NCBI RefSeq assembly: GCF_006345805.1
Contig: NC_042999.1
Span: 135,594,001-135,658,000, forward strand
Source of the DNA: Octopus sinensis
Lineage: Eukaryota
Direction of reading: 5' to 3'
DNA: 64,000 nucleotides
Shown here piece after piece: positions 3,765 through 37,000 of the stretch. The notes under the pieces are model-generated. The model was not told where the DNA came from and made no database searches. It saw only the letters and a list, made by a program, of their open reading frames with translations. How positions within the stretch are numbered: the first letter of the stretch is position 1; each line of letters begins with the position of its first letter. The position numbers and the translations under genes were made by a program.

Positions 3765-4465
3765 TCACAGGCGATGTGCCTTGTCTGCCTGCATCGATAG
3801 CAAACGGGCCCCGGTTGCGCACACTCCCTCGCCATGTGCGACCCCTGACATCTAAAACACCGACCTGAGAACGGCCGCTGTCGTTGCACGGTAGGCTTCT
3901 GCACGTCTTTCTCCGGCCGTCATCCGTCTTTACGCATCTCCGTTACCGCCATCGCTATCGCATTCCGCCCAGTGTTTCGCGTCAACAGGCGGGCTTGAGT
4001 CACAAGTTCGCTCAGCGCCATCTTTTTACTCCCGGGCAATTGTTGTAGGTGAATCCCTACGTCGTCGGAGAACCCATTTACGAACGCCAGTCGCGCTACT
4101 CTCTCCAGCCCTTCTCCTGTAAACCCAGCCAGCGTGGCTAACCTTCGAACTTCTGCAGCGTATTCGTCCACCTGTCCTCCCGTCCATCTAATCGTACCCA
4201 GCTTAGCAAAAGCTGAATACTCACACTCAGTGTAAGCATCTCTCAGTCGTTGCTCTATCATCTCCTCGATCAGACGTTCTTCCTTGTCCATCTCAAGATA
4301 TAGCGTCAACGCGCTCCCTTCCAAATACAACGCCATAAAACTTGCCACAATGCTTATGCCTTGCAGTCTTGCCACCAGCCTGATTTTATGTATCTAGGCC
4401 ACTACATCGCTTTCACCATTAAAGGGTCTGATAATATCGCTGGCGATCCTGATTTTCGCTGCCAT
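3722..4465 (-). pseudogene. Gypsy gag with two zinc knuckles, interrupted by stops
   Basis: ATG 4465 (MAAKIRIASDIIRPFNGE), premature TAG; CFRCQGSHMAREC and CYRCRQTRHIACDC. Confidence 0.85.
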
Positions 4466-12623: not shown

Positions 12624-15600
12624 TTAAACCCAGTTATTCAGGAAGTAATATGTTGGAGTGTTAATTAAATCCTTTACCATCTGACAAAAACTTCAACAGG
12701 ATACAGTTCCCTGGATAAAAAGTTAGCAATCATATCTATCAGGGAATATAAACTACTTTTATTCAAGAACAACAAAGAATAGGAACTCAATGTAAATCAG
12801 TTTGGTGTAGAGAGAGTTTGATGTAAAACCATGCCAGCATGGTTCAATCTAGTCAACTGGTAAAGTACAATAAACTAAGTCAGCTTGGGGTTGTTATGAC
12901 CTTATTGGCATGGATTAGTTAACTTAGCAAAAAATCAGTTTAACTACATAATGACACATTTAGCTAACACAGTAACAACACATCTGGTTTAGCTAATTTA
13001 GTAATGGTGTTGTAACTTGGTAAATAGAAAAAAATTATCAATATTAAAAAATTGGAGCAGGGATGTGGTAGGTGAATACAACTACAAACAACTTTACAAT
13101 AAAGTAAAATAATATATGTGTATAAAAAGGCAAAACTTTAACACAAGCCACTATCAAAACTAAATATTAAAAATATGGAAAAGGAAGGAAGATTTACTTA
13201 AAAAATCCTGCTGAAGATAAAATCAATTACTAGAAGTAGAGTTTGCCAATAGGCACATTTGAGAATGGCAAGGCAAGAATTACCATGGTTGGTTTTGTAT
13301 ATTTTAATGAGGTAGTGATATCTGAAGAATCTAGTGGCAGGAGGCATGAGAGAAAAATACTGCAAGTTCAAAATATGGTCAAAGGATTGCACTGAGGTTT
13401 GAAACGTTTACGGGCACCATAATGATCAGAGTGGTACAAAAACAAAAGAAAAAGAGAAAAAAGAAATGAGGTATAAAAAAAATTAAATAAAGATTATGTT
13501 AAAATTAACAACTGTATAATAGAATAAAAAATTACTTGTATAGTTAGAAAACACCAATGCTATTTTCACTAATAAAAAAAAAAATCGGTTTTCAAATTTC
13601 ACTTTTTTAATAAAATATTACACATGTAATATATGATGCTTTTTGACTCGTAACTATATATTTTTCATTTCATTTAATTTCCTGTATGTTTATTTTAAAA
13701 GAAACACTAGACTAAGAAGAATTCTCCAATTGTCTTCAATTGCAATATTGTTACTCTAAGAAACAAGCAGTCATATTACTGTATTTACATATACACTAAG
13801 TTCTAAAAACGAGACTGAACTCATTTTTATGATAATTACATGGTACAGTTAATTCCCACATATTACTTAGGACTTTGTATATAATATGTAATTATAGAAC
13901 AGAATAGTAAATGGCAGCCGAAGATGACTGGAGAACTTACAAAGAATAAACGTAATTTCTTTTGCAATCAAAGAGTTAATAGTCAGCAAGTATCAGATAT
14001 TGTATGAAACTTCATCATGGAAACACAGAATTTTAATCACAATTGTGCTGTTTATAATGTTAAAAGGTGACTACATTATCATTTTTCAATTGCCTGATCA
14101 GTATTTTGACCATTTAATGTAATAGAAATGTTATAATAGTCTAACTTTACTAGCCATGTGTTGAAGTCTATGCTTAAAAAGCCACATACAGGCTAGTTTT
14201 GATAACGAAAATGTGATTGAAAGTATACATCTAGTGAAAATATTGAACAATCATATAAAGTTTACACATAAGAAGCAAATACATTTGATGCGTTCTGCTG
14301 AACAGCACCTGAACGGTGAGTAAAAGGAAACAAAATATATAATGTATAACTACACGATTGAAGCAAATGTTTGGAAACATTTACTGTGGCATATTTCAAC
14401 AATGTTTAACACAAGAAAAAAGTAAAATCTCAGACAAATACTATGATTGATTGATTGATCTTCATCTACTTTCAAAATACAATATTACCAGCAAATAAGA
14501 TATAAAAAAAGAGAGCTGGAGATAAAAAAACATAATAATTTTAGTTTCTTGTTGGTTAATCTAGGATTGAACATTGTAAAGATGTTTATACTTGAAACAA
14601 AGAGAAGTGTACTGGTATAATACATTTGAGAGAGCATTATATCTGTTTATTTTCACTTTGTAAAAATAATAATCATAAAATAAAATAAGAAACACCAATA
14701 AATGAAACAGATATTTAGACATTTAATATACTTAAATATAATATATTAAAAGAAAATTTATTCTGGAGTCCAGATCTTCCTCACTAACATATACAGAATT
14801 TTGCAATAAATAATACAGAAGCTTTGTGAATGTCATTTTAATGAAGTGAATTTTTAACTTTCTTCATAACTAAACTGGTGTTAGAAAACTGACATCATAA
14901 CAAAGGGCAGCTAAGTTTTTCAAAACAACGGTCACACATCCAAAAAAAATCACATATATAAGACACATTTCCTCTCAACTCATTTTAACTTGTTGTCCAC
15001 ATTTAAAATTGTTAATTATATATTTAAAATAATAATTAAAATTTTCAATCAATTTTTCAATTTCAAAAGCACCATTTAGTTTCTGAATTCATTTCTAACC
15101 ATGTTCACAATAATGATCACACTATAGCTATCAGCATCATCATCATCACCATCATTATTATTAATAATAATAATATTATCATTTCATTGTCATCTAAAAT
15201 AAATTATCAGTTTTAACATTATGTTTCAACAAGTTGAATTTGTGGCAAGTGTGATATATTCTAAAATTTGTCATTTCCAAACCATTCAACATATTAGAGT
15301 TTATATCAAGTGATGCTTCGCTTCTGTTTGCTTGATTCAATCAAATAAGATTTGCTTAATAGATTTTTTTTCTGTTCAGATATTCTCCAGCAGCGTTCAA
15401 AGAGTAATCCACTCAGAACAGATTAGCAGAAAAAATAGCAAGTTTATGCTGGAATGTTAACAAGAGCACAACAGAGAAATGTCACTAGGCTATTGGAAAC
15501 TGAAAAAGCAGAAGAGGGCTTCTAAGAGATAGAATTAAAGTTTGCTGCTAAAACAGCCTGGTTTACCAAATGGAAGATAGTTTACAGAAGCAGCATCGAT

Positions 15601-18429
15601 GGTCACAAAATACTTCAAGTTTTATAACAGGAGCTGCAATTAAAAATAGAATATTATAAGCTGAATTATATTGACATACATATCTATTAAATTCAATAAA
15701 ATTAAATAGAAATTTTTCTTTCTTTCTCCTTTCATTCAGTTCTCTATCATTTATTTCTAGCAATCTCAAAATAGTAAAGAATAGACCCATTTTTGACAGA
15801 GGATTACAGAAAAGTTTAGCCCCACCCCAACAACAACAAAATTATAGCAACTGAAAGATTATGGAAGATCTGACAACACATATTGGTGTGCAAATTGGAA
15901 CAACTCCAATGAGAATTAATGCAAGTGCAGTAACTTCAATGTTGAATAACTACACCATGTTAACGAGAAATCAGAATATATATCTCATGATTTATTCTAT
16001 CATATGAATATGGTTTTAAACATCATCATTCTTTAATGTCCGTTTCCTACACTGGCAGGGGTTGGACAGTTTGACCAGAGTTAGCAAGGCAGAGAGCTTC
16101 ACCAGGCTCCAGTTTGATTTGGTTTGGTTTCTACAGCTTGATGCCCTTCCTAATGCCAGCCACTTTACAGTGTGCTAGGTGCTTTTAACATGGCACCATC
16201 TCGAGCAGTTTTACATGGCACTGACATTAGTGTTTTTTTCATGTGTCACTGGCACAAGACTCTTGTAGGCCAATCCGCTTCACCAGTGGGAGTAGGCTTA
16301 ATGCTTCTGCTATGGGAAATGGATCTTAAGTACAGCAAGGCACCAGGTATCTCAGTCCTTTGTCATCTCATCTGATAAATATATTTTGGTATATTGTACT
16401 CAACCAAATATAAATATATTTTGGTATTTTGTAGGTATTGTAAATTGAAGTTACTGCACTTTCATTAATTCTCATTGGAGTCTGTTCCATTTCATTCACT
16501 AGTAGGTATTGTTAGATCTTATATAATCTTCCAGATTCTATAATTTTGTGCATGGAACTAAACATTTTTGTAATCCTTTGTGAGGGAACAGCTTTCAAAC
16601 ACAAGTCTGTTCCAGTTTTCTGTTTTTTATAAGTATTTCTTTTTCCATATTTCCATATCCCTACAAATTAAATCACCACTTTGGATGAAATAACCTCTGC
16701 TACGTGTATTGACTACTTTTTCCCAAAGTACCCAAACACTTCCTGTCTTAAATTAGTATCTACAATGTCTCATATCATTTATATTTTTTATTCTTTGGGT
16801 TAATTCTCATCATAAGCATTGTATTAAAGTGTGATACTTTGCTATATTAAATGTCAATAAAATACCTATAACCTGGACCTGTGTGGTTGATGATTAACTA
16901 TGAAAAAACTGAGACACAAGACAGCAAAATGGCAGAATCATTAGAGTACTAGAGAAAAAAGTACCTAGTGTATTTGTCACACTTTCTCACCACCACCATC
17001 ATCACTTTAATGCCCACTTTTCTATGTTACCATGAATCAAACAAATTTGTGAAGCAAATTTTCTACAACTGGATGCCCTTTCTGTTGCTAACTGTCCCTT
17101 GTTTCTAAGCAAGGTAGTATTTCCACCCATGGCCGCATGTTTTTCACAGATGACTAGAAATGAACAGCATTGTCAATATAATATTGATATTTGTTGACAA
17201 CCATCACATGAAGTTAAGCCAAGGGTGCACACAAACACACACAGCTGGTTTCTTTTAGTCTCCATTTACCAAAACCACTCACAAGGCTTTGGTTAGTCTA
17301 GAGCTATAGCAGAAGACACTTGTCTGAAATACCATGAAGTGGAACTGAATCTGAAACCATGTGCTTAATGAAGCAAGCTTCTTAACTTCACAGTCACACC
17401 TGCGACTTTACATTCTGAGTTCAAATTCTGTTGTAGTCAATTTTGGCATTTATCATTTGCTGAATTGATAGAATAAAATACCCAACCTGGAAAATGGATT
17501 AGCAGAATTGCTTAAGTACTAAACGAAATGCTTTGTAGTATTTGTTCTCGCACTTTGTAGAAAAATTACTGAGGAGTTCACCACATTCATGCAGGCATTG
17601 CAAACTTGTCTCTAACTAGCCAACAAGGGTATATAAAAGATATTTGAAAAACCCAACAGGAAATCACCTTTGTCTTCTGCACAAAAAGTACATGACAAAC
17701 ACCTCCATGAGTCAGTTATTGACTTTGATGGCACAGGAATGAAAAGAAAGGAGACACTTGTGGAGACAAGAGTGTCAGCTAATACCAGTAAAACATTTCT
17801 ACAGAAGAATGGCAGCCACTCCAAACTGTAATTTGATGTAACAAGAAAACTGAACACATATAGTTAAAGTTCCATTAGTGTGACCTACTTGTGTGCGCAC
17901 ACACACACATGTACATCTTTGCCAATGTACACATGCAGGTTCTGTCCAACAAATTCCACTCAAAATTTTTTGGCCAACCTGAAACTATGGTCAAATCCAC
18001 TTTCCCCAAGTTTGTTTGCTTATTCATTTCTAAGCTTTCCACAGTAGAATAAGTCGGATGAACATAATTTTGAGGCATTGTTTTACAGCCAAGTACTTTT
18101 CCTGTTCCTATATTTTAATTTTCATTTTGCCTGTATATTAGTAATGAAGAATAAAGAAGATATGATAAAAAAAATGACAGGATATACTTGTGGAAATCTA
18201 AAGTAAAAGCTTCCATTGATCTAACTTATAAAGCTATTTCATTATTAGAATTTAAAAAATAAACTAAATCTTTTATGTACTTCTTTTGAAATTCACAACA
18301 ATCTGCAGTATTTTACTTTATAGTAATATGACCTTTGCTTATTCCCAAGGATGGGCAGATATGGGTTAAAAGTGTAAAACAGTTTATATATATAAACAAT
18401 ATGTTTCCATTAAAATTACAATTCTGGAC

Positions 18430-18664: not shown

Positions 18665-18964
18665 TCCTATACAATTAACTTCATATCTGAAGTGTATATA
18701 TACAATATTGATATCCATTATATTTCAATCAGGTTTATCTCAATCTTCAACAAGTATCTTATTCCTAGATATATACATAGTCCTAGACTAGATTCAAAGT
18801 AGGAAACTATATTTCTATACCAAAGCAGAAATAACCTTATCTATCAAGGCACTAAAATACAGCAACACATCTCAGTTATCCAATAGAATTTCCAACAAAC
18901 AACAACTTACAGCTGAAACCAATCCATTTGTCAGTTTACAGCACCAAACTTTAAAGAACAACAA

Positions 18965-19055
18965 TCATTTCTCCATTGTGTTTTCTTTTCTTTCTTTTTG
19001 AGAACTGTCCACTGCCAAAGACCCAGGTCGACTATCAGCAGAGCTGTTGACTTCA
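18965..19055 (-). CDS. RB1: RB1 terminal coding exon: (N)EVNSSADSRPGSLAVDSSQKERKENTMEK*
   Basis: tttcag acceptor, phase 2, ends TGA; terminal EK as in human NKEEK*. Confidence 0.78.
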
Positions 19056-22000
19056 CTGAAAATAGTTATTTTGAAATTAATGACAAGGAACAGGCTCCAT
19101 ATGGCTATTTAAGTAACATTTTTACCAGCAGGGGAGAATATTTTAATATTTTCATCTTCATCCTTTTATTCTAATGCTAACACTACTTGATAAGATAGGT
19201 AAGTATTTATTATTAGCTACCATGTTAAAAAAAAACAACTGATGAAGAGCAAGAGAGTGGCCCAAACCCTATAACATTCAGATTATTAGCAGTTTGTCAA
19301 AAAGAAACCAATAGAATAAGTACCAGGCTCAAAAGAAAGAAAAAACACACACACACACACACACATATATATACAATGGACTTCTTCCGGTTTCTATTCA
19401 CCAAATCCACTCACAAAAGTTTGGTGGGCCGAGGAAGAGGGATTGAACCTGGAACTATGTGGTTGGGAAGCAAACTTCTTACCATTTATGCTAGAATGAA
19501 TTTTAATTGGACAATATTTATTCCAATAAAATTTTACACCAACATAAAATTATAAATTTATATTTCTGAATATAGAATTAAAGTATAAAGATTTAAATAT
19601 ACTCCAAACATATTCAGCCTTGATATAAAGTATTAATATTTGGGATTTATAACATATTTATATGTTATAAATATTAAAGCATATCCCATCAACATCATTT
19701 TGCATCTTCTTTACCAAGGTGGCACAAAGTGAATGAGAATTGTCAAGGGTCAAGTTAGTTCTTATTTGTTAATTTATGCCCTCCTAGACAAATTGGGGCC
19801 ATGTTTCGCTAGCACATTCCATTTCTGACAGGTTTCTCTGGCTGAATGCCCTTCCTATCATAGGCACTTTACAGGATGTACTAGGTACATGTCATCAAGG
19901 CACCAGCATCAGGGAGGTTGTCATGTCCTCAGCAAAGTTAAAGAACTCCTGGTTACTCTAGACTGTCTGCTTGATAAGCTGTTTCAGCATGGTATTCAGT
20001 TAAAATCGCAAAAATGGACATAACCAGCATGGCTTGTTTCAATTGCACATGAATAAATCAAGTACAAAAAAAAAAAAAAAGGATCCAACTGGAATCAAGA
20101 ATGTTACCTGATACTCAAACTCTCTCTCTCTCTCGCTCTCTCCCAGAGGTGATAAATGGACTACAGAGGCAAACTCCCTCTATGTTTACATATTCAGAGT
20201 CCATATTCAAAAATAATCGGTAACAAGTACAACTCACTTTTCAGAAGCAGGTTGAATGTCATCAAATTGCAGAAAGCGCTGTGTCTTCTTCAGAGCTGAT
20301 GACATATAACGTGGCATTGGAGATGATTGTTCTTTCTTTTCAGCAGACTTTAAAAACAACATACAAGAAAAATTTAGCAACATTTAAGAATTCCTCTTAA
20401 AGGGGAGAAAAAAATAATTATCAATAAGACAATAATATAATCCTGCACCTCTCTTATTATTATTATTATTAGTCAACAGTTCATTCATCAGCTTGGTTCA
20501 TTAGTGTACTTGCATCATCCATGCCCTCTCTATGATAGAGAGAATATCACTGATGAGGTCACACATGGCAACAAAATGACTATAATGAATCTAGCTGATT
20601 GATTAATTGATTAATAAAATGATTAAATGGTTAACAAGTTGACTAATATTAAATAAAAGAAGTGAAACAGAACTAGTGTTTGTTATTGGCATAATGATCC
20701 TTCCAAGGTACAAAGAAATCTGTTTCAATACCCGATTTCACATTAAGAAGCTTGCAAACCAAATACAGAAACAAAATTATCATTAAAAACAAAATGTAAT
20801 TATTAACACTTTAGCATTCAGATTACAGTCAAATGTAATGCTTATGATGTGATTGTTTATTATTAGAATGACATTGTAGGGCAGATGTGAGAGGCTGGAT
20901 CTGGATGGTTTGAACATAAAATAAGTCAAATGTTTTGGCCACACGTGACTGGTCTAAATTCTAAAGGGTTAAAAGAAACAGTAATTATCATTAAAAGTCA
21001 ATACTATTATTAAAAATTATAGACTTATCATTAAAAAATATATATAATTAGTATTAAATATAAATAAGAAAAAATATGATTATTTTAAGTTAACAATCTC
21101 TTTATGCCATACATACCTCTTTTGCTGGTGTGGTAGAGACTCTTGAGCTGACTGGGGTTGGGGGTTTAAAGGAAGGGTCTTTCCAGGTATTGGTTTCAGA
21201 TCTAGAGGAAAAGGAGAAATGGTAGCAACAGCAATAATAAAAAATATGTTCAGAGAACTAAGAAAAGCTTGAGATATGTAAATGAAAGCTATCCCAGGAA
21301 CAGAGGAAATAGCAGCCAGCAAAATATGGGTTTAATAAACCGGCAAGTCATTTAACATCTGCTTTTCCATGCTTGCATGGGGCCAACAGAATTTATCAAG
21401 GTAGATTTTCAACAGCCTAGTACCCATCATGTTTCCAAGCAGGGTTATATTTCCTATAGTTAAACATGTTTCCACAAAATACAGGAAACAAACAACCTCG
21501 CTTGTATGACAATGACGCTCATTTACAACCATCATGTGATGTCTAGACTAGAGCACACACACATGACAGGTCTCTCTTAGTTTCTGTCTACCAAATCCAC
21601 TCACAATGCTTTGATTGGACCAGAGGTATAGAAGAAGACACTTGCCCAAAGTGCCATGCAGTGAGACTGCACCCAAGACCTCATGGTTAGGAACCAAGCT
21701 ACTTAACCACAGAGCCACAACTGGATAACTTCCAAAGTGTTTAGGAGACACATCACTAGAATTTTGTGATATCAATACACGGCTTTGACCAATACAGAAC
21801 TTTATAACAACAATAATGTATTTAACATAGGCACAAGGCCTGAAATTTGTTGGGGTGATGGTGGAGAATAGTGAATTATTTCAACTCCAAAATTTGACTG
21901 GTATGTTATTTAATCAATCCAGGATGTATGAAAAGCAAATTTGGAAGGAGGCAAGCCCAAGACTTGACTGATACGCTATTTTATTGACCTCAGCAGGATT

Positions 22001-25000
22001 TGAACCAGGAATGTAAAGTGCTGGAAGAAATACTGCAAGGTTGTCCTACACTCTAATGCTTCTACCATTCCACTGCTCTAATATAATAATACTAATAATA
22101 GTCGTTTCTGATTTGGGCACAAACCCAGCAATTTTGAGGAAAGGGATTAGTCAATTACATCGACCCCAGTATTTGACTGATATTCCATTTCATCAACTCC
22201 AAAAGGACAAAAGGCAAATTTGAACTTTTTTCCTGGTGCTTTAATGATTCCACCAGTTAGCTACCATAACAATTATAATAACTGACAATATTGATTTCCA
22301 ATATAACCATAAGATCACAAATTTTATAGGAGAGTTCAGTTAATTTAATTGAAACAAACTATTGTTTGGTTAATTATTTTACCTAGCAGGAAATGCTGAA
22401 GCATGGAATAAACTACCAGCATCAGTTGTTAGCTGTCAAGACACCACATCCTTCAAATCTTCCATACTTCCTAAAATACATCAACAGTACACCTGATGCC
22501 CCTCAAACCTATTTTGTTTTTAATGACTTATTCACTGTTCACTACCTGTGCATATTCTATGTACTGTTCATGCAGTTTTTGATTACTTTTTCTGAGTTGT
22601 AGTGCACCTGGGAACTGTATACAATAAGTTCATCATTATTTTAAAGCCAGAATGTAACTAAATAACACAAGGCATTGTCTGATGCTCAACAGATCTTCAT
22701 GCTCTTCATCTTAGCCAAGTCTGTATCACAAAAACTGGCAAGGAAATATTTCAGCTCTTAACAATTACTAATCCTCTACAAAACTCAGGTAAGATCCACT
22801 ACAGAATATAACTCAACATCTGCAATGGTTGTTACTACACATACGAACATCCTACACTGCATTAAAGGAAAAATTACATAACTTGGTTTGCACGAAGTCA
22901 CTCATCAACACACTTCATTCTCTGGCTTCTCATTCCATTATTTTTTATGCCATAACTACAGTGGCACTTGCTCCCCAGCATTTGTCAGACTCATGCCGCC
23001 TACACACTCAGACACTTCCAACTAATTTGTCACTGATATTGTGTCCACCCCTCTAGGCCCAAAACTGAACAGCAATCACACCAACCTTTGAGAGCCAGCA
23101 AAAGCCATGAGCACAGCCTTTTCCATCAGACTAATCCAATAATCAGAAATATTAAATTTCTAAATATCTCATAGAGATATGTACGGTGGTAGGGCGATAG
23201 AATGGTGGTATACTGTCAATTTAACGTGACAGTAGGGGATTACACCACCGCTGTTTAGCCCTAGGAAGCATCGACGCCTCCTGATGGCTTTGACACATTT
23301 TTTCCTGTGTGCTTATATATTTACGGACATAGGAAAAAATGTGTCAAAGCCATCAGGAGGCGTCGATGCTTCCTAGGGCTAAACAGCGGTGGTGTAATCC
23401 CCTACTGTCACGTTAAATTGACAGTATACAACCATTCTAATGCAATAATGTCTTCTTTTATATTACTTCATCATAAACAGTGGTTGGCAGCAGCAGAAGT
23501 GGCATAACAACCACTTTTCCGTACAGACTTTTCGTAGGCCAGGTGGCCTTACCTGTTTCCAAGTTAGGTAAGATTTCCATGCAGATTTTCTGGTCAGATG
23601 CCCTTCCTGTTGCCAACCCTCACCTGTTTCCAAGCTAGATAATATTTTTATCATGGCCAGACATGTTCTTGCAGAATATTGGAAATAATATTTCTTGTAT
23701 GACAGCGACACTTTTTGTACAAGTCTCACGTGATGTCAAGACAAGGGGATACAAACATACACACACACTTACTTAAATGTGGTAATAATGAGTGTGGGAT
23801 AAAAATGTTAGAGAGCTTAGTGGTCAAAACGATTCTAGTGTTAATGTATTTGTACACCAAAGCCTTAAGGCAGGGTACATAACTCTGCTTGTCCCACTCC
23901 CACACCAGAGCTGAATAGCTAGCTGCAAGCAGGGAGGACAACCAGCTATTTAAAAAAATATGTTCCAAATAGAACGCTTTTATAAGCCTAAACTACCTAC
24001 CGGCTTACTCTAACACAAAGCAAATAAATAAAAAAAAAAGATTTTGGTGACATATCCAGATTCTCTAAGTTTTCAGGCTGCAGAAGCAGAAAGCAACACT
24101 GAACTACTACGTCCACTTCTCTATGCTTGCATAGGTCAGATAGAGTATATATATATATATATGTGGAAGTGGAAGACTCAAGAAGACATGGGATGAAGTA
24201 CTGAAGAACACCTGACGATGCTGAACCTTTCGGGCGAGATGACAGAGGACCGAGATGCCTGGTGTCTTGTACTCAAGAAAACCCATACTTTGCAGCAGAA
24301 GTGTTAAAATTGGTCCCTCTGGTGGTGTAAAACACTTGTGGTGGCACCATGTAAAAGTGCTCATGCAGTGCCACATAAAAGTGCCCACACACTTGTGGTG
24401 ACACCATGTAAAAATGCCCGTGCAGTGCCACATAAAAGTGCCCAAATACTTGTGGTGGCACCATGTAAAAGTGCCCATGCAGTGTCACATAAAAGTGCCC
24501 AAACACTTGTGGTGGCACCATGTAAAAGTGCCCGTGCAGTGTCACATAAAAGTGCCCAAACACTTGTGGTGGCACCATGTAAAAGTGCCCGTGCAGTGCC
24601 ACATAAAAGTGCCCAAACACTTGTAGTGGCACCATGTAAAAGTGCCCGTGCAGTGTCACATAAAAGTGCCCAAACACTTGTGGTGGCTCCATGTAAAAGT
24701 GCCCAAACACTTGTGGTGGCACCATGTAAAAGTGCCCAGCATGCTCTGCAAAGTGGTTGGCTTAGGAAGGGCATCCATCCACAGAAACAATACCAAATCA
24801 GAATTTGGTGCAGCTCCCCAGTTCTGATCAAATTGTCCAATCCATGCCAGCATGGACAACGGATGTTAAATGATGATGACAATGATGATGATGATGATGA
24901 TGATGCATGTATGCACGCATGTGTGTGTGTTATTGTCTCCTTGCTTTGACTTTATGTGACAAAAGTAGACATCAAAACGTTGATGATGATATATGCAGAC

Positions 25001-28000
25001 ATTACTCACCAACTGCTACAAGTATTAATCTTAGCATGAGAAAAATAGATAAATACTTCTCATTGTTATCAACAATGAAGTATTCCAGTTGTTCAAGCAG
25101 CTTGACTGCATAACTCATTGAATCAGCATGTGAAGTGGTTGAATATCCCACAGACACTTGAACCTTTAACTTAACCCTCAAACAGAAACAGCAAGATACA
25201 TTGTGTGACAAAGCCAATCCTTTGAACTATGAGTACAATTCACACACTATGCTTCAACAGTTTCTGCCTCCACAGTTTCCCCCATAAAGCTTGCATTAAT
25301 CAGAAGTTATGGTAAAAGACACACACCCAAAATGACATACAGTGGGATTGAACCCTGGATCTCATGACTGCAAAGTATTCTTAATCATTTGGCCATGCAT
25401 ACATCAATAGCATGTGCACACACACTCACACACACACACATGTGCATGCAGAATTCCTACCTGTTGGTAGAAGCATCCATCCCGTCACGCGGCCTTTTAG
25501 CTGTGTTCCTAGTGGAGTCATTGTCTAAGTTGTCAAACTGGAGACGTTTCTGAGCTCGGCTTTGAGCAATGGTATCATTGATGTTACGTAATTTCTCAGC
25601 AGACTGGCAGGTAAATAAATAAAAGCAATTTTATTACTTATGCTGTTTGCTTTAAAATGTTAAAAAAAGAATTTATAAAATGACAAGATGATTAATAAAA
25701 TACAGAAAAACAAAGAGGCTACAACATGAATTTGGACGCTCAAAGAACAATAATTTGGCGTTTGCTAAAAAGCATCCGTGAGGTAAACCCGTGTAGCAAA
25801 CCAAATGGCGGTGCCCCAGCATGGCCACAGCTCATTAGCTGAAACTGGAAAAATCAAAAATCAATATCTTTGAAGGTCATAATGAAAGCTACAGGTTTGA
25901 ACCTCAGCTCTAGTATAACTACCAAAAACTATATAGAAAAATAAAAAGTCATGGTGTAATGAATTTGGAGGCTCAAAGAACAGTAATTTAATATAAATAT
26001 ATTTATATATCTTTGAAGGTCATAATGAAAGCTACAGGTTTGAACCTCAGCTCTAGTATAACTACCAAAAACTATATAGAAAAATAAAAAGTCATGGTGT
26101 AAAGTAAGAGAATTTCTAATGTTCATTTTAACCTAAATAGAATCAGTTGTATCGTATGATTATTCTTTTGTCAGCAATATCAGAACTGAAATATCCATAA
26201 TAAATTTAGAATGAAAAATAAATGAATAAATTAAGCCTTTTATTTCATTATAGTAGAATGTGAGGATCACGTGATAGTATGAAGAGGTGAGGTAATCAGG
26301 ATATAGTAAATTGAAGGACAAACAGAATATACAGTGAAAGAAGAGAAACAGGACATAGAATGGTAGAAGAAAAATACAATTTAGAAGGGTAAGAAAGAAA
26401 TACAACATAGTACAAAGAAGAAGAGGCAACACATCAAATGAATGGTAGAGAAATAAAATATAGCATAGTGGGAGAGAAATATAACATAGTATGGTGGGAG
26501 AGGAATAGAATATAGCATGGAAAAAAAGATAACATGAGAAGAGAGAAACAGAACAGAGTATAAGAGCAATATAGAATATAGTAAAATGAATGAAAGATAA
26601 AACATAGTTTGATATATTCTATTTTTACTTTATATCAGATTTTATTATCAACAAATGTCTTTTGTTACAGGTTTCCAACACACCAATCAGTTTCATTGCA
26701 ATTCTAGAGGCAAGAATGACAAAGGCATTTTGAATCACATACACAGGTGTGTGCGCACACACATACACTGGCGAAAATAAATTTAAGACCAATGATAAAA
26801 GTTCTATTTCTTAGAAAATATTTTGTTACTAACACCATACAAATTATTTCTATCTTTTATACCTTATGCAGAATACTAATATGTATTTTGTTCTTGTTGC
26901 TCATTTTTGCTACAATCTTAAGCTTTAAATAAAATTATAATGATACGGTCTTAAACTAATTTTGCCGGTAAATTTGAAACGTTTATATTAATTTAGCATT
27001 AGAATTCTTCAAGTTGTATAAAAATAGTTATTGTCTGCATCATTCAAAAGAGAAATAAATTCTGCATAAGGTGTAAAAGATAAGAATAATTTGTATGGTG
27101 TTAGTAACAAAATATTTTGTAAGAAATAGAACTTTTATCATCGGTCTTAAATTTATTTTCGCCAGTGTATACACATAACAAGCTTCTTTCAGTTTCTGTC
27201 TCCCAAATCCATTCACAAGGCTTTCATTGGTCTGGGCCTATAGTAGAAGACACCTGCCCAAGATGCCATACATTGTGGCTGAATCTAAGACAACATGGTT
27301 GGAAAGCAAGCTTTTTAACCACACAACACACATGTACATACTTTTACCAACCTAAACCAGCAAAAAAGTTTCATAAATTAATGTTTTCAAACTAAAATTC
27401 TGTATGGTATTTGTTCTACTCAGTCTGTCATCCTTGCCATTGTAAATGCAGCAAACCAGAGATTAGCCCATTGGTTGGAGAAAACATGCAATTATTCATA
27501 AAATGCAATATAAATTTTCTTTTTAAAATATATATAAACAAAAAGTAATAGAATACAGTTATAACAATAGAGAAATTGAGATTAATTGTAATTATTACAA
27601 AAAGAAAATCTGAGGAAGCTGTTATAATGAAGAAGTTGAGATGAATAACAGGTCACCAATATAGAAAACATGTGAAGCTTACCCCAACTCCTTCTACAAA
27701 GCAGTACAACTGATCTGTCCTTGGAGTAAGTTGACCTTGTGTCTTGAACAGTGGACTTTTAGCATAACTCACATGAAAGTTCTTCTTGCCTGCAACACTG
27801 GTATTGAAAATAAAGGAACTTTGTTAAAAGCAAAACAAATAAAACTTTCACATAATTGTTAATCTTACTAACAAGCAAAATGAGTTTGTGAAGGTTATGG
27901 TGATAATAAACGTTGATGGAAAATGGATTTAGCAATATTAACAGATTTAAACTGGTAATACAAGACTTAATTCTTTCATGACATAATTTTAATGAAATAC

Positions 28001-31000
28001 ACTGCCCATGTGAAGGCTCACAGCTCAGCGGTTAGAACATTGGGCTCACAATCACGAGGTAGTGAGATTGATTTCTGGACTGGACTGTATGTTGTGTTCT
28101 TGAGCAAGAAACTTTATTTCATGTTGTTCCACTTCATTCAGCTATAGAAATGAATTGCAACATCACTAGTGCCAAGCAGTATTGGCCTTTGCCTTTCCTT
28201 TGGATAACATTGGTGGCATGGAAAGGAGAAGCTGGTATGCATGGGCGATTGCTGGCCTTCCATAAAAAGCAACCTTGTCCAAACTTGTGCCTCAGAGGAT
28301 AATTTTCTAGGTGCAATCCAATAGTCATTAATGACTGAAGGGGGTCTTTACCCTTTTACACTGCTGTTGTGGAAGGATTCTGACCACCCCACCCAAGTGA
28401 CTAAAGGTGAACTGTCTCATTGTTATAAAACAAAGAACTGTGAGCGATTGGCAGTTCGTGTAACTAGCAGTTCACTGTGAGCCTTTGATATAGAGTATTG
28501 AGTCTCGAGTAATAGTAATAGTAGTGCATCATGTATATACTTTATAAAAACTACCCATGTGTTTCAATTCATTTTAGAAAACAATGACAAATTTGGAAGG
28601 ATTTAGTGAAGTAACTTTTGGCCTGGTGCTTGATAAAAGTGGGACTGAATCCAAAGCCATGTGGTTGGGAAGCAAATTTCTTACCATAACAAAATAACTG
28701 TACTTATAATTATGAAGGAAGACTTTAACCCTTCAGCATTCAGATTATTCTGTCAAATGTAATGCTTATTTATTTTTTTAACCTCCCTCAACTGTGCACT
28801 GAAGAATAATTTTGGACAGGGAGTTGTGGCAGGATACATGACCAGGCAAGCTTTCGTCTTTTTAGCTGTGCAAGGAGTTGTTGCTGCCTGCCAGAGTATT
28901 TGTTGACTTGCTGCCTGACAAAGCTGTTAGTTTTGTGTTTTGTTTATGGGGTGGTAACTGCTTCTGCTGGCAGGATAAACTTAGTGAGGGACTGAATGCT
29001 TGGAGAGGAGACTGGCATTGCCAAGCATTTCTAAGGCACACTGAAATTCCATAATAGACACACAAACAAGGCTTTAAAGTATCCTTGATAATTAATTACA
29101 ATATAGTCATACATAATTATATTCTTAATAAAACATATATCAGAAAAGAAGCACACTCTAAAGAATAGAACAGTAATTGTTACAACAAAAAATTTTTATA
29201 TCTAGGACATAGAGTTACCCAAGATTTTGTATCCACAAAGCCAAAGTCTTGTGGACAGTTCGTCAAACTCTATACAAAGACAAAATTTTTTAATTTCTCC
29301 ATTACGGACATGAGGAAGCACTCAGAAATCGAGAAATACATCTTAACAAAGAACATTAATGGGGACAGGTTGAACCAGAGGATAAAACAACCCTTATAGA
29401 CCCAGAAAGGCCTAACCAGCAAACTGGGTGATCCAATTTCCCAGTAGATAGCGCTTCAAGTGGATACATTTAAAAAACACTTTTTTAATATTATTTAATG
29501 CACCTGGTTTCATATAGTCCTTAAGAATTTTGGCTCTCTCCACAATAAAGATCTTGCAACAGCCACTTCCATTAATATATGGGCCTGGATGATCAATTAT
29601 TTTCCACCTGATATCACACAGGTTCCCTTGATCATTGAGGCGCTACAACTGGCAGGCCAGGGATGTAACAAACTGTCTTTCTAGGACTCTGAAGGATGAC
29701 TAATGGTTAAGAAGATATCATTTGAAAGAAGTACTGACAGATCAAACAGATTTACAAGCATGGAATGAGGCCATATTCGCACTCTTGGTAACATATGGTG
29801 CAGGGCCGGTCATCCCATTGGTGTCGAAGATAATTATATGGTCATCATCTGTAGTGGTGGTACTGGAAATGCTGGATACTCCCTCCATATCGCTGATCCT
29901 GGATTGGTCATCATCTCTAGGTGTGGCAATTGTACTGGTGGTAACCTATATTGCAGACCTGGTCACTCTATCTGTGTCTATGGTTTGTTCATTATCTGCA
30001 GTGGTGGTGCCGGGGTTGTCGGTGATGCCCTCTATGATGCTGGTCCTGGACTGGGCGTGACAATTGTACTGGCACGAGATCTGGTTAATCTGCTAATATT
30101 GCTGTTGGATGGTACATTACTGTTAATGTGGATAGCAAGTCTAGGTATCACTGTAGCATCATAAATGACCCCTTCAGCCTTGCATCAGACCCCTACTGAA
30201 CAGTTATTATATACCTTGCAAGAGCAACCTGCCTCCTCTATATTGTGGGTACTTGTTAAAATGTTTTTTATGTTAGGTGCACAACTAAAGGAGACTCTTA
30301 GGCTGTGTCTGTTAAATAAATGCCTGTATCATGTGTGTGTGTGAAACGTTTGTCTATCAATCTAAGGAAAATCTTTCCCACACAAATCTTGACGTTGAGT
30401 GAGAAGGGTGGACCAAACCAAACGACATTTCTGCAGTGCTTCCTTGTCCGGGTGCTAGGGCCAGGCATTTAGGAGATGCAGTCCTTAAACCCACTCGATG
30501 CCAGTATCTCATTGTAGTAGGGGGCAGTGGCATTGAAGAAATCTTGCCTCGAGGATAAATTTGAGATCCTCTTGCTTGCACCTTTCACTAGGTTCTTGAA
30601 AACTATAGGAGGATGGCAGGAGGCAGAGCTAATATAAGACAGCCTCTCATTTGGCTTGTGATGGGGCCTGTATGTACCAGAGCCCAGATCTAAAGTAACA
30701 TTTAAGAAATCTACTATAGTGAGATTAATCTCAATGTTGATCTTGAGACCCTTTGAGCCTGAGGTGCTAATTAGGTCCTTTCTAAGCCTATCTAATGTGT
30801 GGCTGTTGGCTTCTCTAGAGATGGCTAGGGCATCATCTCTGTAGAAGTTGAAGAGGACCAAAGGAAACCGCTTCTTTAAGATGTCCAATCTGATAAGATC
30901 ACAGACATTGGCACTGTCATATGCTCCCATAGCTATATCAAAGGAGCCCTTGGGACTAGATTGCTTGACCCAAGTCGAATCTTTGCCGAACTGCACCGTC

Positions 31001-34000: not shown

Positions 34001-37000
34001 GCTGAAATAAAGATCAAACATGTAGTGTTTGTACTTAACTGGCAAAATATGACCATGCCCAAGTATAACAATAACTATATATATATATGATGTGCATAGT
34101 ATTTACCTGAAAACTGGTGAAGAGGTTACACATGACTTAGGTGTAGAAGAGAGAGGTGGAGTCTGAAAAGTAAGACAACATATTCAAATTAATATTAGAA
34201 CTATGAAAAAAAAAACACTTTACATAACAAGTTTTGTATTTATTTTTTAAAACATTTTACACACACATATGGTGGACAGGAGGGTCCACCGTGTATGTGT
34301 GTGTAAGGTAAAACTTCATCAGGACTGGTTTGATGACAATGACATGGTTGTACTGGCACTGTTGGATGATAAGAGAAAGGCCTACACTGATTAGCAGAAC
34401 CACCCAAACTACCCCTCACAGCATGACAGGTACAGGGACTGTCAAGCCAGAGCCCAGAAAGAGCTTCACAGCAAGCAAGCAGATGGTGGAAGCAGGAAGT
34501 TGAAGAAGAGCAGCTCAATGTCAACACCAACAAGTCCAAGATGCTGTACAGTACCATCAAGGCCATCTATGACCCTTCCAGAAGTGGAACAACCACACCC
34601 TGACATCCACCAATGGCACAACCATCATCAAAGACAAAGAAGGGTTCAGGGCAAGGTGTAAGGAATACTTCAACTAACTCCTAAAGTGGCCATCCACTGT
34701 CAACACCTCAGAAGCCTCTATTCAAGAACCATGACCTGCTGCATAGTGTAAATGAGGTCAAGACTGCCATAAAAGAAACAAACTGTGGCAAAACTCTCCT
34801 TCATCCCATCTCTCTCCTCATGTTCATTTCTCTTCTCTCTCACACACTTTCTTGCTCATATGCCCTCTCTCTCTATTTATATATATAATCTATATATCTT
34901 CCCATCTCTCCTTACCTCTTTCACTCTTTCCTTTTATTAGTTTCTTACCTCCTTCACTCCAACTTTCAGTTTCTACCTACTGTGACCTATAACAAACTGT
35001 CAGCATTGTAAGCAAGGATTGAAAACCTACAGCAGGAAGATATGATCTCAGCAAGCCACAAGGAGAAGCATAACTCCAAATAAATACTTGCATAGAAGAG
35101 ACTATAAACCTGTCCAGGAGAGCAGTAACTCAGTAAGGTGACACTTTAGTCCAAACAGATAACATCACTAGTAAAGTGGAACAATAAAACACACCTGTTT
35201 ATATAGTAAAGTGATTGGCATTATGATAAGCAACCAATGAGTAAATCCATGCCAAAATCACAGTAAATACAAATAAAATGAAATTCCTCAATTGCATATA
35301 TTGGACTATGTAATGGGTTGGTCAAGTGGACCTATCTGAGTATATGTGAGAACCCCTTGACTGTCAGTGAGTAATAGCAAACTTCCTTTAAGGTGTAGAG
35401 TTCAAATAACCTACATACCACAGGATATCCTCCTTGCTTAGTGAAGTGAAAAAAAAATTAATTTTATAATTATCAATGTTGGTATAATGAAAAATAGATC
35501 TATAAAAAGTATAGTGATGCAAGAGAGGAGAGATGTGTTCATATGTACTTTGCACAAGAGTTGAATGGAGAGGAGACTCTACAAGACACCTCACAGGCAG
35601 AGAACATAGGTACACAGTCTTCTAAGTAATAATGCTGTTGATGCTTGAGTAAGCATACTGTTGATGGAGAAATGGATAGATAAATTAATTAACGTACTAA
35701 GAATATGCAACAGAATAATGATGCTTGGACTAATCATAGACAATGCAACTGCAGCTGTTATCTCTACTGATGCACCACAATCAAAACTGACCGATGAACA
35801 AAAGGACTGTTTTTGTGATCATCTCAGGAGCAGTTACTAAAATAGATATGTTGGGAAGTATCATGATGGCTACTCAGGAGTACATAAGGAGAAACCAAGG
35901 CTTCTAAAAGTTTGTGTTCCAAATGAACTATCTGCAACACTAAAATAGACTGATCAGTTACCTGATTACCTACTAAACAAATAAATACATAAAGTTAACA
36001 GAGTGCATATTCATCATGAAGTTGTACTACTCAACATTCAGAAAAATGTATCATTCAACATAGACGAGTGATTGGTGACATCAGAATAAGAAACAATTAG
36101 ACTAAATTAAGACAATCTGGAGAAGGAAAATACCAAAACTAGAACATCCTTCTGATGTTTTAGGTGACACATGATGAGAAGGAGGCAGGAGAGATTCAAA
36201 ACATACAAAACAACTGTTAGTTTTCAATGAGATAATTTAAAGTGGTCACAGATAAGATCTGTGGTTGAAACAAAATACCAAAGCAACATGGTAGTGGAAT
36301 GGTAGTGTAGATCGGGTCCTTTATCTGTACTACTATTCCATTATAAAGGTCTAGAAAATAGGGAGAAAATAGAGAATTAAGAACAATATCAAGGTTTACA
36401 CAGCAATAGAGAGAAGCTGAAAGCAAGAGGCCTACCAATGTTCTGTGATACCAGGGTCAGAAGCATGAAGTGTTCCAAATTGCAAAGCAGTGTATCAGTG
36501 TAAATCAAGACAGTGGGCAAAAGTGTTTAAAATGACAGTGGTACACAACTATTACCAACATTGAGAACAAGACTGGAAATGATATTATGAGGGTTGCTGA
36601 ATATCAAGAATGTATGGGCAGAAGGATTACCTCCAAGTAGACTTTACAGAGGACTTGGCTATTTAAATTGATAGTTATATGGGCAAAATGACCATTAAGG
36701 ATATGAAAGCAGGTAAAGTTGATGGATCATCAGCAGCGATGCCGAAAATATCCAATGAAGTAAGGCTGAAGCTAGTCACTTGCATAGTTAACCAGGTTGT
36801 ATCGGGAAGTGTTATATCCAATGACTGGAACAATATCCTGCAAAGGTACTAAACTAATGGATTAAGTGACAAAAGCAAGAGTTTAGCACAACTGACTGGA
36901 AAGAGATTTAGCTGAGATGAGACACAGTTTAGGTTTGTACCAGGCCAGGATATTACTGGTACCCACTTCCTACTGAGACAACTGAAAGAGAAATTCAGAG

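What the first reader, a model, noticed from the sequence alone, without database searches (positions are those of the whole stretch)
20238..25603. RB1 C-terminus has a duplicated RbC exon arranged for modular in-frame splicing
Seen: exon A (25461-25603, SAEKLRNIND...QKRLQFD) and exon B (20238-20347, SAEKKEQSSP...QRFLQFD) both start TCTGCTGA, share LQFD and are both phase 0 to 2. An 85-nt phase 2 to 0 linker exon (21117-21201, with TP and TPAK) joins them. A+linker+B, A only (skip 195 nt) and B only (skip 228 nt) all keep frame. Established: human ex25 carries part of the RbC-core helix that binds the E2F1-DP marked-box region and the overlapping cyclin/PP1 docking motif KLRF. Inference: this RB has two docking motifs and extra CDK sites; a B-only isoform would lose the EKxxxIN helix and could alter E2F binding.
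Basis: partly seen in the sequence, partly recalled or inferred. Interest (0 to 1): 0.7.

Follow-up and report, generated by a model that had tools for sequence, protein, structure and literature searches.

The report
Two extra conserved exons in cephalopod RB1 tail
The octopus retinoblastoma gene (RB1) has two extra, real coding exons in its tail, shared with argonaut and cuttlefish, that add a second protein-docking motif and extra CDK sites, but nothing here shows they are alternatively spliced.

Summary
On the minus strand lie three canonical AG/GT exons: A (25603-25461, 143 nt), linker L (21201-21117, 85 nt) and B (20347-20238, 110 nt). Their phases are 0>2, 2>0 and 0>2.

The gene is an RB1 orthologue (Pfam RB_A 120, RB_B 102, Rb_C 29 bits).

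- **Exon A** matches human exon 25 in length and phase (from memory). It holds the only predicted helix in the tail.
- **L and B are real coding exons.** Same order, phases and splice sites occur in Argonauta hians and Sepia pharaonis. dN/dS against Argonauta is 0.19 (L) and 0.045 (B).
- **Co-inclusion.** Both public gene models include A+L+B together. Aplysia and Tegillarca lack L and B.
- **"Duplicated exon" is weakly supported.** B resembles exon 25 only over the Q[KR]xLxFD motif (shuffle p 0.0005-0.009). Its SAEK start is not kept in Sepia (TPQK).
- **Conserved content.** A TPxK CDK site in L, and R-x-L-x-F-D-D at residue 24 of B.
- **Frame modularity** follows largely from conserved phases. 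Skipping L or B alone breaks the frame.

No transcript data could be reached, so alternative splicing is untested. This is a lineage-specific variant of a known gene, of modest interest.

The parts
34107..34162 (-).
   Evidence: tblastn and blastn with the Argonauta and Sepia micro-exon; boundaries (tttcag|ACT ... TTCAG|gtaaa)
27683..27797 (-). RB1 exon encoding (S)VAGKKNFHVSYAKSPLFKTQGQLTPRTDQLYCFVEGVG; it ends in phase 0 just before exon A and corresponds to the strand part of the human RbC core
25461..25603 (-). Exon A, the counterpart of human RB1 exon 25 (143 nt, phase 0>2). It carries the RbC-core helix SAEKLRNINDTIAQ (25603-25562) and the first docking motif KRLQFD (25549-25532)
   Evidence: 36.8 bits to the exon-25 profile; helix
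21117..21201 (-). Linker exon L (85 nt, phase 2>0). It is disordered and holds the conserved full-consensus CDK site TPAK (21131-21120) plus one more TP
   Evidence: 84% aa identity to Argonauta; dN/dS 0.19
20238..20347 (-). Exon B (110 nt, phase 0>2). It is disordered and carries the second docking-type motif RFLQFDD (20278-20258) and one SP site
   Evidence: 91% aa identity to Argonauta; dN/dS 0.045
18911..19055 (-). Exon T1, the last coding exon (…NEVNSSADSRPGSLAVDSSQKERKENTMEK, stop TGA at 18967-18965). A GTAAGT donor follows at 18910, so it is probably the penultimate exon
   Evidence: (conserved with Sepia, which has the same stop followed by a donor)
13953..15633 (-). Exon T2, a probable final exon that is mostly 3'UTR (acceptor ttgcag|CTCCTG at 15633). 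It is conserved with the annotated last exon and downstream sequence of Argonauta RB1.

Best explanation
The window holds the 3' two-thirds of an octopod RB1 orthologue on the minus strand.

Exon A is the counterpart of human exon 25. It encodes the helix of the RbC core, which in human Rb binds E2F1-DP1. It also encodes the first K-R-L-Q-F-D motif. In human Rb this motif is at once the cyclin A/E RxL docking site, the PP1 'KLRF' site and the second half of the bipartite NLS.

L and B are two further bona fide coding exons. They lie between exon A and the ancestral last coding exon (T1). Within the sampled taxa they occur only in coleoid cephalopods. They are normally included together with A.

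Together L and B add about 65 disordered residues. These carry a conserved full-consensus CDK site (S-T-T-P-x-K in L), one to five further S/T-P sites, and a second R-x-L-x-F-D-D motif at a fixed position in B.

Most likely function (inferred, not shown): a second docking and nuclear-import handle with additional phospho-acceptor sites. This would tune how cyclin-CDKs and PP1 act on the RB tail.

Shown: the exons, their phases, their conservation, purifying selection, and co-inclusion in gene models. Inferred: constitutive inclusion in mRNA, and binding of the second motif to cyclin, PP1 or importin.
For: - RB1 identity: RB_A 120 bits, RB_B 102 bits, Rb_C 28.6 bits; tblastn with human RB1.
- Exon anatomy.
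- Same three exons with the same phases and canonical sites in Argonauta hians (A 146, L 85, B 107 nt) and Sepia pharaonis (155, 76, 110 nt).
- Amino-acid identity to Argonauta: A 84%, L 84%, B 91%.
- dN/dS against Argonauta: A 0.04, L 0.19, B 0.045, compared with 0.19 for the neighbouring exon.
- Both gene models join A+L+B.
- R-x-L-x-F at residue 24 of B and TPxK in L in all three species.
- The AF2 model of the Argonauta tail shows a helix only at SAEKLRNINDTIAQ and disorder over L and B.
- Human reference points: 2AZE chain C is Rb 829-874, and 1PJM is the Rb NLS KRSAEGSNPPKPLKKLR. RxL docking on Rb by cyclins E, A and D is described in bioRxiv 10.1101/397448.
- Aplysia and Tegillarca go from the exon-25 counterpart (phase 0>2) directly to a tail exon.
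Against: - No RNA evidence could be reached, so constitutive inclusion rests on two genome annotations. The Sepia model is demonstrably wrong at its 3' end. The basis of the Argonauta model is unknown.
- The Argonauta protein is named 'isoform X2', which hints that isoforms are annotated in some relative.
- The function of the second motif is inferred from pattern matches only.
- Only three cephalopods were compared with two other molluscs. Nautilus was not available, so 'coleoid-specific' is provisional.
- Weak second LxF-type motifs occur in gastropod terminal exons and in two unidentified transcripts. The motif may therefore be older than the exons.
Confidence: 0.7

Rival explanations
1. 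One reading: A and B are paralogous RbC exons used as splicing modules. The tissues would make A+L+B, A-only (L+B skipped) and B-only (A+L skipped) RB isoforms, with one or two docking motifs and with or without the E2F-binding helix.
For: - All three combinations keep the frame through to the T1 stop.
- The same phase pattern holds in Argonauta and Sepia.
- B has 76 nt of conserved upstream intron against Argonauta.
- The Argonauta protein carries an 'isoform X2' name.
- Argonauta joins B directly to T2, so 3'-end variation does exist in the lineage.
Against: - Both gene models co-include A, L and B.
- L (85 nt) and B (110 or 107 nt) are individually asymmetric. Skipping L alone frameshifts into a stop inside B, and skipping B alone stops at once, which is unlike typical conserved cassette exons.
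- All acceptors and donors are strong.
- No flanking intron is conserved with Sepia. Flank conservation against Argonauta is no greater than for other exons, for example the exon at 41680-41561.
- Frame compatibility of L+B skipping follows automatically from the full-length frame.
- A B-only product would lose the only conserved structured element of RbC.
Confidence: 0.15
2. Origin by tandem duplication: B arose as a copy of exon 25 (A) in the cephalopod stem lineage. It then lost the helix but kept the docking motif. L is a newly exonised spacer that restores the frame.
For: - A and B have the same phase (0>2).
- B matches the exon-25 profile over 'sqKRLkFDd', with shuffle p = 0.005, 0.009 and 0.0005 for octopus, Argonauta and Sepia.
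- Sepia B keeps VTPNTKRTQRHLRFDD, which resembles the VTPKSQKRLRFDQ of Lingula and bivalve exon 25.
- B starts SAEK or SSEK in octopods.
- MAFFT places octopus B on the exon-25 column block.
Against: - The similarity is confined to a motif of about 12 residues, a kind that evolves convergently.
- There is no match to the helix half of the exon.
- Sepia B starts TPQK.
- A against B within Sepia gives p = 0.056.
- No DNA-level similarity was found beyond the first 8 nt.
Confidence: 0.4
3. B is not a duplicate. It descends from an older second LxF(D) motif in the lophotrochozoan RB tail, which became split off by intron gain in cephalopods.
For: - The Aplysia terminal exon encodes STPSVPKSSKSLDFSSEPPQPE, a TP site followed by a basic stretch and L-x-F, in the same order as the end of L plus B.
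- Other gastropod-like tails end SPSKAKKSLL or SASKAKRQL.
- Two unidentified transcripts carry RSRKSLNFD and VRKQMRFDDD downstream of the first motif.
Against: - The motifs are short and the alignments are not significant.
- Bivalve tails (Ruditapes, Tegillarca) lack a credible second motif. The Tegillarca 'RFVLNF' looks like read-through of a splice donor.
- The taxa of the two transcripts are unknown.
Confidence: 0.25
4. L and B are chance open frames in an intron and are not exons.
For: The first word-index search with A+L+B found nothing.
Against: - Conserved order, phases and splice sites in three cephalopod genomes.
- 84-91% amino-acid identity to Argonauta while the surrounding intron does not align.
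- dN/dS of 0.05-0.19.
Confidence: 0.02

Closest known systems
Human RB1 exon 25 / RbC core (Rb 829-874 in PDB 2AZE; KxLxF cyclin and PP1 docking site; bipartite NLS in PDB 1PJM)
   Same: Exon A starts in phase 0 at [ST][AS]EK. It is 143 nt (human length from my own recollection) and ends in phase 2. It encodes an N-terminal helix followed by K-R-L-Q-F-D, against human K-K-L-R-F-D.
   Different: The spacer between helix and motif is shorter, and the basic KR of the human NLS upstream half is not evident. Two further coding exons (L and B) follow before the last coding exon. Human has a 50-nt exon 26 with different phases, and a cyclin-D docking helix (895-915; bioRxiv 10.1101/397448) for which no counterpart was seen in T1 or predicted in B.
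RB1 gene models of Argonauta hians (GAB1600415.1) and Acanthosepion (Sepia) pharaonis (UniRef 'RB1')
   Same: They have the same A, L and B exons, phases and motif positions, and the three exons are co-included in the predicted proteins.
   Different: - Argonauta lacks T1 and ends ...PSENS* on the T2 exon.
- The Sepia model uses an internal donor in T1 and runs into low-complexity junk.
- Sepia exon A carries an extra KCLKFD motif.
RB genes of Aplysia californica (XP_005106407.1) and Tegillarca granosa (KAJ8310627.1)
   Same: There is a phase-0 intron before S[AS]EKL and a phase-2 intron after the exon-25 counterpart. The first K[KR]Lx[FL]D motif is present.
   Different: There are no L or B exons: the exon-25 counterpart is spliced straight to a tail exon. 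Aplysia has a weak second motif (KSLDF) inside that terminal exon.
Tandemly duplicated, mutually exclusive exons (the general class)
   Same: Two neighbouring exons have the same phase and share a motif.
   Different: The lengths differ (143 against 110 nt). Similarity is limited to about 12 residues. A frame-restoring linker exon lies between them. The available gene models use both exons together rather than exclusively.

Membership tests
Retinoblastoma (pocket protein) family, RB1-type | RB_A and RB_B pocket domains | tested here: met
   Pfam RB_A 120.2 bits (cut-off 25) and RB_B 101.9 bits (cut-off 26.9) on the spliced window model.
Retinoblastoma (pocket protein) family, RB1-type | Rb_C C-terminal domain (RB1-specific, binds E2F1-DP1) | tested here: met
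   Pfam Rb_C scores 28.6-31.1 bits against a cut-off of 21 when exon A is present. With B replacing A the score is 20.0 bits, below the cut-off.
Retinoblastoma (pocket protein) family, RB1-type | Orthology to annotated RB1 of related species | tested here: met
   The best representatives are Argonauta 'retinoblastoma-associated protein-like' and Sepia 'RB1'. The exons are colinear across the window.
Tandem exon duplication / mutually exclusive exon pair | Same phase and similar length | tested here: inconclusive
   Both are phase 0>2, but the lengths are 143 vs 110 nt (octopus), 146 vs 107 (Argonauta) and 155 vs 110 (Sepia).
Tandem exon duplication / mutually exclusive exon pair | Significant sequence similarity along the exon | tested here: inconclusive
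   Only the Q[KR]xLxFD part aligns. Pairwise p is 0.009 and 0.056. Profile scores are 6-11 bits with p 0.0005-0.009, and there is no match to the helix half.
Tandem exon duplication / mutually exclusive exon pair | Exclusive use in transcripts | not testable with these tools
   No transcript data for octopods could be retrieved. Two gene models use both exons together, which argues against exclusivity.
Cyclin RxL (Cy) docking motif | [RK]-x-L-x(0,1)-hydrophobic in a disordered region near CDK sites | tested here: met
   KRLQF in A and RFLQF in B. The motif is conserved at residue 24 of B in three species, lies in a region predicted to be disordered, and has S/T-P sites in L and B. This is a pattern match only.
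Cyclin RxL (Cy) docking motif | Binding to the cyclin hydrophobic patch | not testable with these tools
   This needs pull-down or kinase assays.
PP1 RVxF-type docking motif (as human Rb KLRF) | [RK]-x(0,1)-[VIL]-{P}-[FW] | tested here: met
   RLQF in A and R-F-L-Q-F in B. This is a pattern match only, and binding was not tested.

The most novel reading that the evidence does not exclude
Coleoid cephalopods regulate RB by coordinated skipping of the L+B pair, or of T1. This would yield tails with one or two cyclin/PP1/importin docking motifs and different numbers of CDK sites. A rarer form would be a helix-less B-only isoform that cannot clamp E2F-DP through RbC. Together these would be a splicing-level switch on RB control that is not known in other animals.
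Probability: 0.12. Interest if true: 0.55.

Novelty: new variant of a known kind. Interest (0 to 1): 0.27.

Why it matters
RB's C-terminal tail is where cyclin-CDKs, PP1, importin and E2F1-DP converge. A conserved insertion that duplicates the docking motif and adds a full-consensus CDK site shows that this regulatory hub can be expanded in evolution. It also offers a natural experiment on motif multiplicity in RB control.

The practical value is modest. The result corrects and extends the cephalopod RB1 gene model by adding the micro-exon, L, B and the T1/T2 3' end. It also defines exactly which junctions need to be counted to test for isoforms.

Tried and rejected
- **Word-index protein searches.** All three were used. 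A+L+B found nothing. Pocket B plus tail found only Sepia and Saccoglossus. The Sepia tail found nothing. The index evidently does not return octopod relatives, so no isoform set could be collected.
- **Spliced window protein as a query.** A substring of the Sepia protein was used instead.
- **PDB sequence search with the octopus tail.** Only a chance hit.
- **Intron conservation against Sepia.** None beyond the exons.
- **Intron conservation against Argonauta.** Short flanks at many exons, nothing special for L or B except 76 nt upstream of B.
- **Rfam and tRNA scans of the region.** Nothing.
- **Literature searches.** Searches for cephalopod RB splicing and for the two run accessions gave nothing relevant.
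- **Exon B as the cyclin-D docking helix counterpart.** Considered and rejected. No helix is predicted and the intron phases differ from human exons 26 and 27.
- **Tegillarca 'KRFVLNF' as a second motif.** Considered and rejected. It probably results from reading through a GT donor.
- **MAFFT alignment of single exon peptides to full proteins (A1).** Unreliable for L and T1, so not used.
Full report
**1. What is in the sequence**

The finding lies on the minus strand. Reading it and translating confirms three exons with canonical splice sites.

| Exon | Window coordinates | Length | Phase | Peptide |
|---|---|---|---|---|
| A | 25603-25461 | 143 nt | 0>2 | SAEKLRNINDTIAQSRAQKRLQFDNLDNDSTRNTAKRPRDGMDASTN |
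| L | 21201-21117 | 85 nt | 2>0 | (R)SETNTWKDPSFKPPTPVSSRVSTTPAKE |
| B | 20347-20238 | 110 nt | 0>2 | SAEKKEQSSPMPRYMSSALKKTQRFLQFDDIQPASE |

The next coding exon, T1, starts at 19055. It ends ...KENTMEK with a stop at 18967-18965. A+L+B, A-only and B-only all stay in frame. Skipping L alone frameshifts into a stop inside B, and skipping B alone terminates at the first codon of T1.

**2. The gene**

- The spliced window model scores RB_A 120 bits, RB_B 102 bits and Rb_C 28.6 bits in Pfam.
- The window covers the region from about residue 276 of the Argonauta protein to the 3' end. The 5' exons lie outside the window.
- Human exon 25 is 143 nt and starts in phase 0 at TSEKFQKINQ. This is my own recollection of the RB1 exon table. 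The peptide itself is confirmed by PDB 2AZE chain C, which is Rb 829-874.
- Exon A has the same start, length and phases, so A is the counterpart of exon 25.

**3. Are L and B real exons?**

Yes. The evidence comes from two other cephalopod genomes.

*Sepia pharaonis.*
- The second protein search returned Acanthosepion (Sepia) pharaonis RB1. Its tail reads ...GIG SAEKLRSIND...QKRLQFD... SESTFKSPMSPAHSAARGSTTPGKE TPQKKESPSAGPRHVTPNTKRTQRHLRFDDNQGSSE....
- Its locus shows separate exons of 155, 76 and 110 nt with phases 0>2, 2>0 and 0>2 and canonical sites.

*Argonauta hians.*
- The exhaustive representative search added 'retinoblastoma-associated protein-like isoform X2' (GAB1600415.1).
- Its locus has exons of 146, 85 and 107 nt with the same phases.

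*Conservation.*
- Amino-acid identity between the window and Argonauta is 84% for A, 84% for L and 91% for B. Pocket exons range from 55% to 85%.
- Nei-Gojobori dN/dS against Argonauta is 0.04 (A), 0.19 (L) and 0.045 (B). The exon just upstream gives 0.19.
- Outside the exons the introns do not align with Sepia. With Argonauta only short flanks align.

Chance open frames are excluded.

**4. Is B a duplicate of A?**

Only weakly supported.
- Local alignment of A against B gives p = 0.009 in octopus and 0.056 in Sepia. It covers only Q[KR]xL[QR]FD.
- I built a profile from 23 non-cephalopod exon-25 peptides. It scores A at 36.8 bits and Sepia A at 49.9 bits.
- The same profile scores B at only 6.0, 5.8 and 11.4 bits (octopus, Argonauta, Sepia). 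Composition-shuffle p values are 0.005, 0.009 and 0.0005.
- The B match is confined to the 'sqKRLkFDd' part of the profile. L and T1 do not match.
- The shared TCTGCTGA start is 8/8 in this species only. B begins SSEK in Argonauta and TPQK in Sepia.
- Sepia B keeps VTPNTKRTQRHLRFDD, close to the VTPKSQKRLRFDQ of Lingula and bivalve exon 25. This is the best argument for an old duplication.
- Against that, gastropod terminal exons carry a weak second motif. Aplysia has STPSVPKSSKSLDFSS.
- Two unidentified transcripts carry RSRKSLNFD and VRKQMRFDDD downstream of the first motif. The motif could therefore predate the exons.

I leave the origin open: duplication about 0.4, ancestral tail motif about 0.25, the remainder convergence.

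**5. Distribution**

- In Aplysia the exon-25 counterpart (95 nt, phase 0>2) is spliced directly to the terminal exon.
- In Tegillarca the counterpart (122 nt, phase 0>2) is followed by a single tail exon.
- The L+B pair is thus not a general lophotrochozoan feature. In the present sample it is shared by Octopoda and Decapodiformes.
- Nautilus was not available.

**6. What the exons encode**

- AlphaFold2 on the Argonauta tail, with a 13-row alignment, gives a low-confidence and mostly disordered model. It has one tail helix, SAEKLRNINDTIAQ, at the start of exon A. L and B have no secondary structure.
- Pattern scans show K-R-L-Q-F in A and R-x-L-x-F-D-D at residue 24 of B in all three species.
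- They also show a full-consensus CDK site, TP[AG]K, near the end of L in all three, plus one to five additional S/T-P sites in L and B.
- In human Rb the homologous KKLRF serves three roles. It is the RxL site for cyclin docking (bioRxiv 10.1101/397448, citing Adams 1999 and Hirschi 2010). It is the PP1 site (own knowledge, Hirschi 2010). It is part of the bipartite NLS (PDB 1PJM).
- The most likely role of L+B is therefore a second docking or import handle with extra phospho-acceptor sites. This is inference from motifs.
[quoted passage not shown] Motif multiplicity as such is not new.

**7. Alternative splicing**

No transcript evidence could be obtained. Indirect evidence leans towards co-inclusion.
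- Both gene models join A, L and B.
- L and B are each asymmetric.
- All sites are strong.
- There is no unusual intron conservation.
- L+B being a multiple of 3 is required for the full-length frame to exist. A+L being a multiple of 3 has a one-in-three prior.
- A B-only product would drop Rb_C below the Pfam cut-off (20.0 against 21) and would lose the only helix.

The 'isoform X2' label on the Argonauta protein shows that isoforms are annotated somewhere in a relative, but not what they differ in.

**8.

- T1 is followed 54 nt after its stop by a GTAAGT donor at 18910. In Sepia the donor lies 39 nt after the stop.
- A further exon, T2, has its acceptor at 15633. Together with more than 1.5 kb downstream it aligns to the annotated last exon and flank of Argonauta RB1.
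- T1 is thus probably the penultimate exon and T2 a 3'UTR exon.
- Argonauta lacks T1. It joins B to T2, ending ...PSENS*.
- The same join in the window would give ...PASENSCYKT*.

**9. Verdict**

- Supported: two docking motifs, extra CDK sites, and exon A as the counterpart of exon 25.
- Weak: the claim that B is a duplicated exon.
- Untested, and disfavoured by the indirect evidence: modular alternative splicing.

This is a lineage-specific variant of a well-known gene. The exons are already present in public gene models, though apparently not described. Interest is modest.

Noticed in passing
window 18911-19055 and 13953-15633 (minus strand): The stop-containing exon T1 has a GTAAGT donor 54 nt after its stop. 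A further exon, T2, is conserved with the last exon and 3' flank of Argonauta RB1. RB1 here probably ends in a separate 3'UTR exon. Argonauta lacks T1 and joins B to T2.
   Followed up: partly
window 34107-34162 (minus strand): A 56-nt RB1 micro-exon (TPPLSSTPKSCVTSSPVF, with S/T-P sites) sits in the 14-kb intron.
   Followed up: yes
L001 (Sepia pharaonis) 26980-27106 and the annotated CDS up to 28797: The public Sepia RB1 model uses an internal donor inside T1 and then translates about 190 residues of CT-rich low-complexity sequence (FSFAFFFLFS...). The true end is probably ...NEASGSTAGQSSTTMENSPNERKENKIDK*. The pocket A part is annotated as a separate upstream gene.
   Followed up: partly
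L001 18821-18975 (Sepia exon A): Sepia exon A carries an additional KCLKFD motif downstream of KRLQFD. This gives three RxLxF-type motifs in the Sepia tail. Octopods have KRPRDG or KRQRCDG at that place.
   Followed up: no
window 24330-24704: A 57-bp minisatellite (6.6 copies, 94% matches) lies in the A-L intron. It produces long spurious ORFs on both strands.
   Followed up: no
window 58413-58319, 42584-42493, 27272-27182, 21660-21565, 19430-19378, 17296-17247: An interspersed repeat of about 95 bp occurs in at least six copies in RB1 introns. It is also present at least twice in the Argonauta locus (L002 18072-18163 and 37858-37952). It is probably an octopod SINE. No tRNA or Rfam match was found.
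   Followed up: partly
window 1019-4375 (minus strand) and 30469-33481: Long ORFs have retroelement character. One is a pol-like ORF set (integrase-like and reverse-transcriptase-like peptides) downstream of RB1. The others are reverse-transcriptase-like ORFs inside the 14-kb RB1 intron. The family was not analysed.
   Followed up: no
L004 (ERR14707600) and L005 (SRR17902662): Two full-length RB transcripts from unidentified invertebrates also carry a second [KR]xLxFD motif downstream of the first (RSRKSLNFD and VRKQMRFDDD). The taxa could not be determined.
   Followed up: partly
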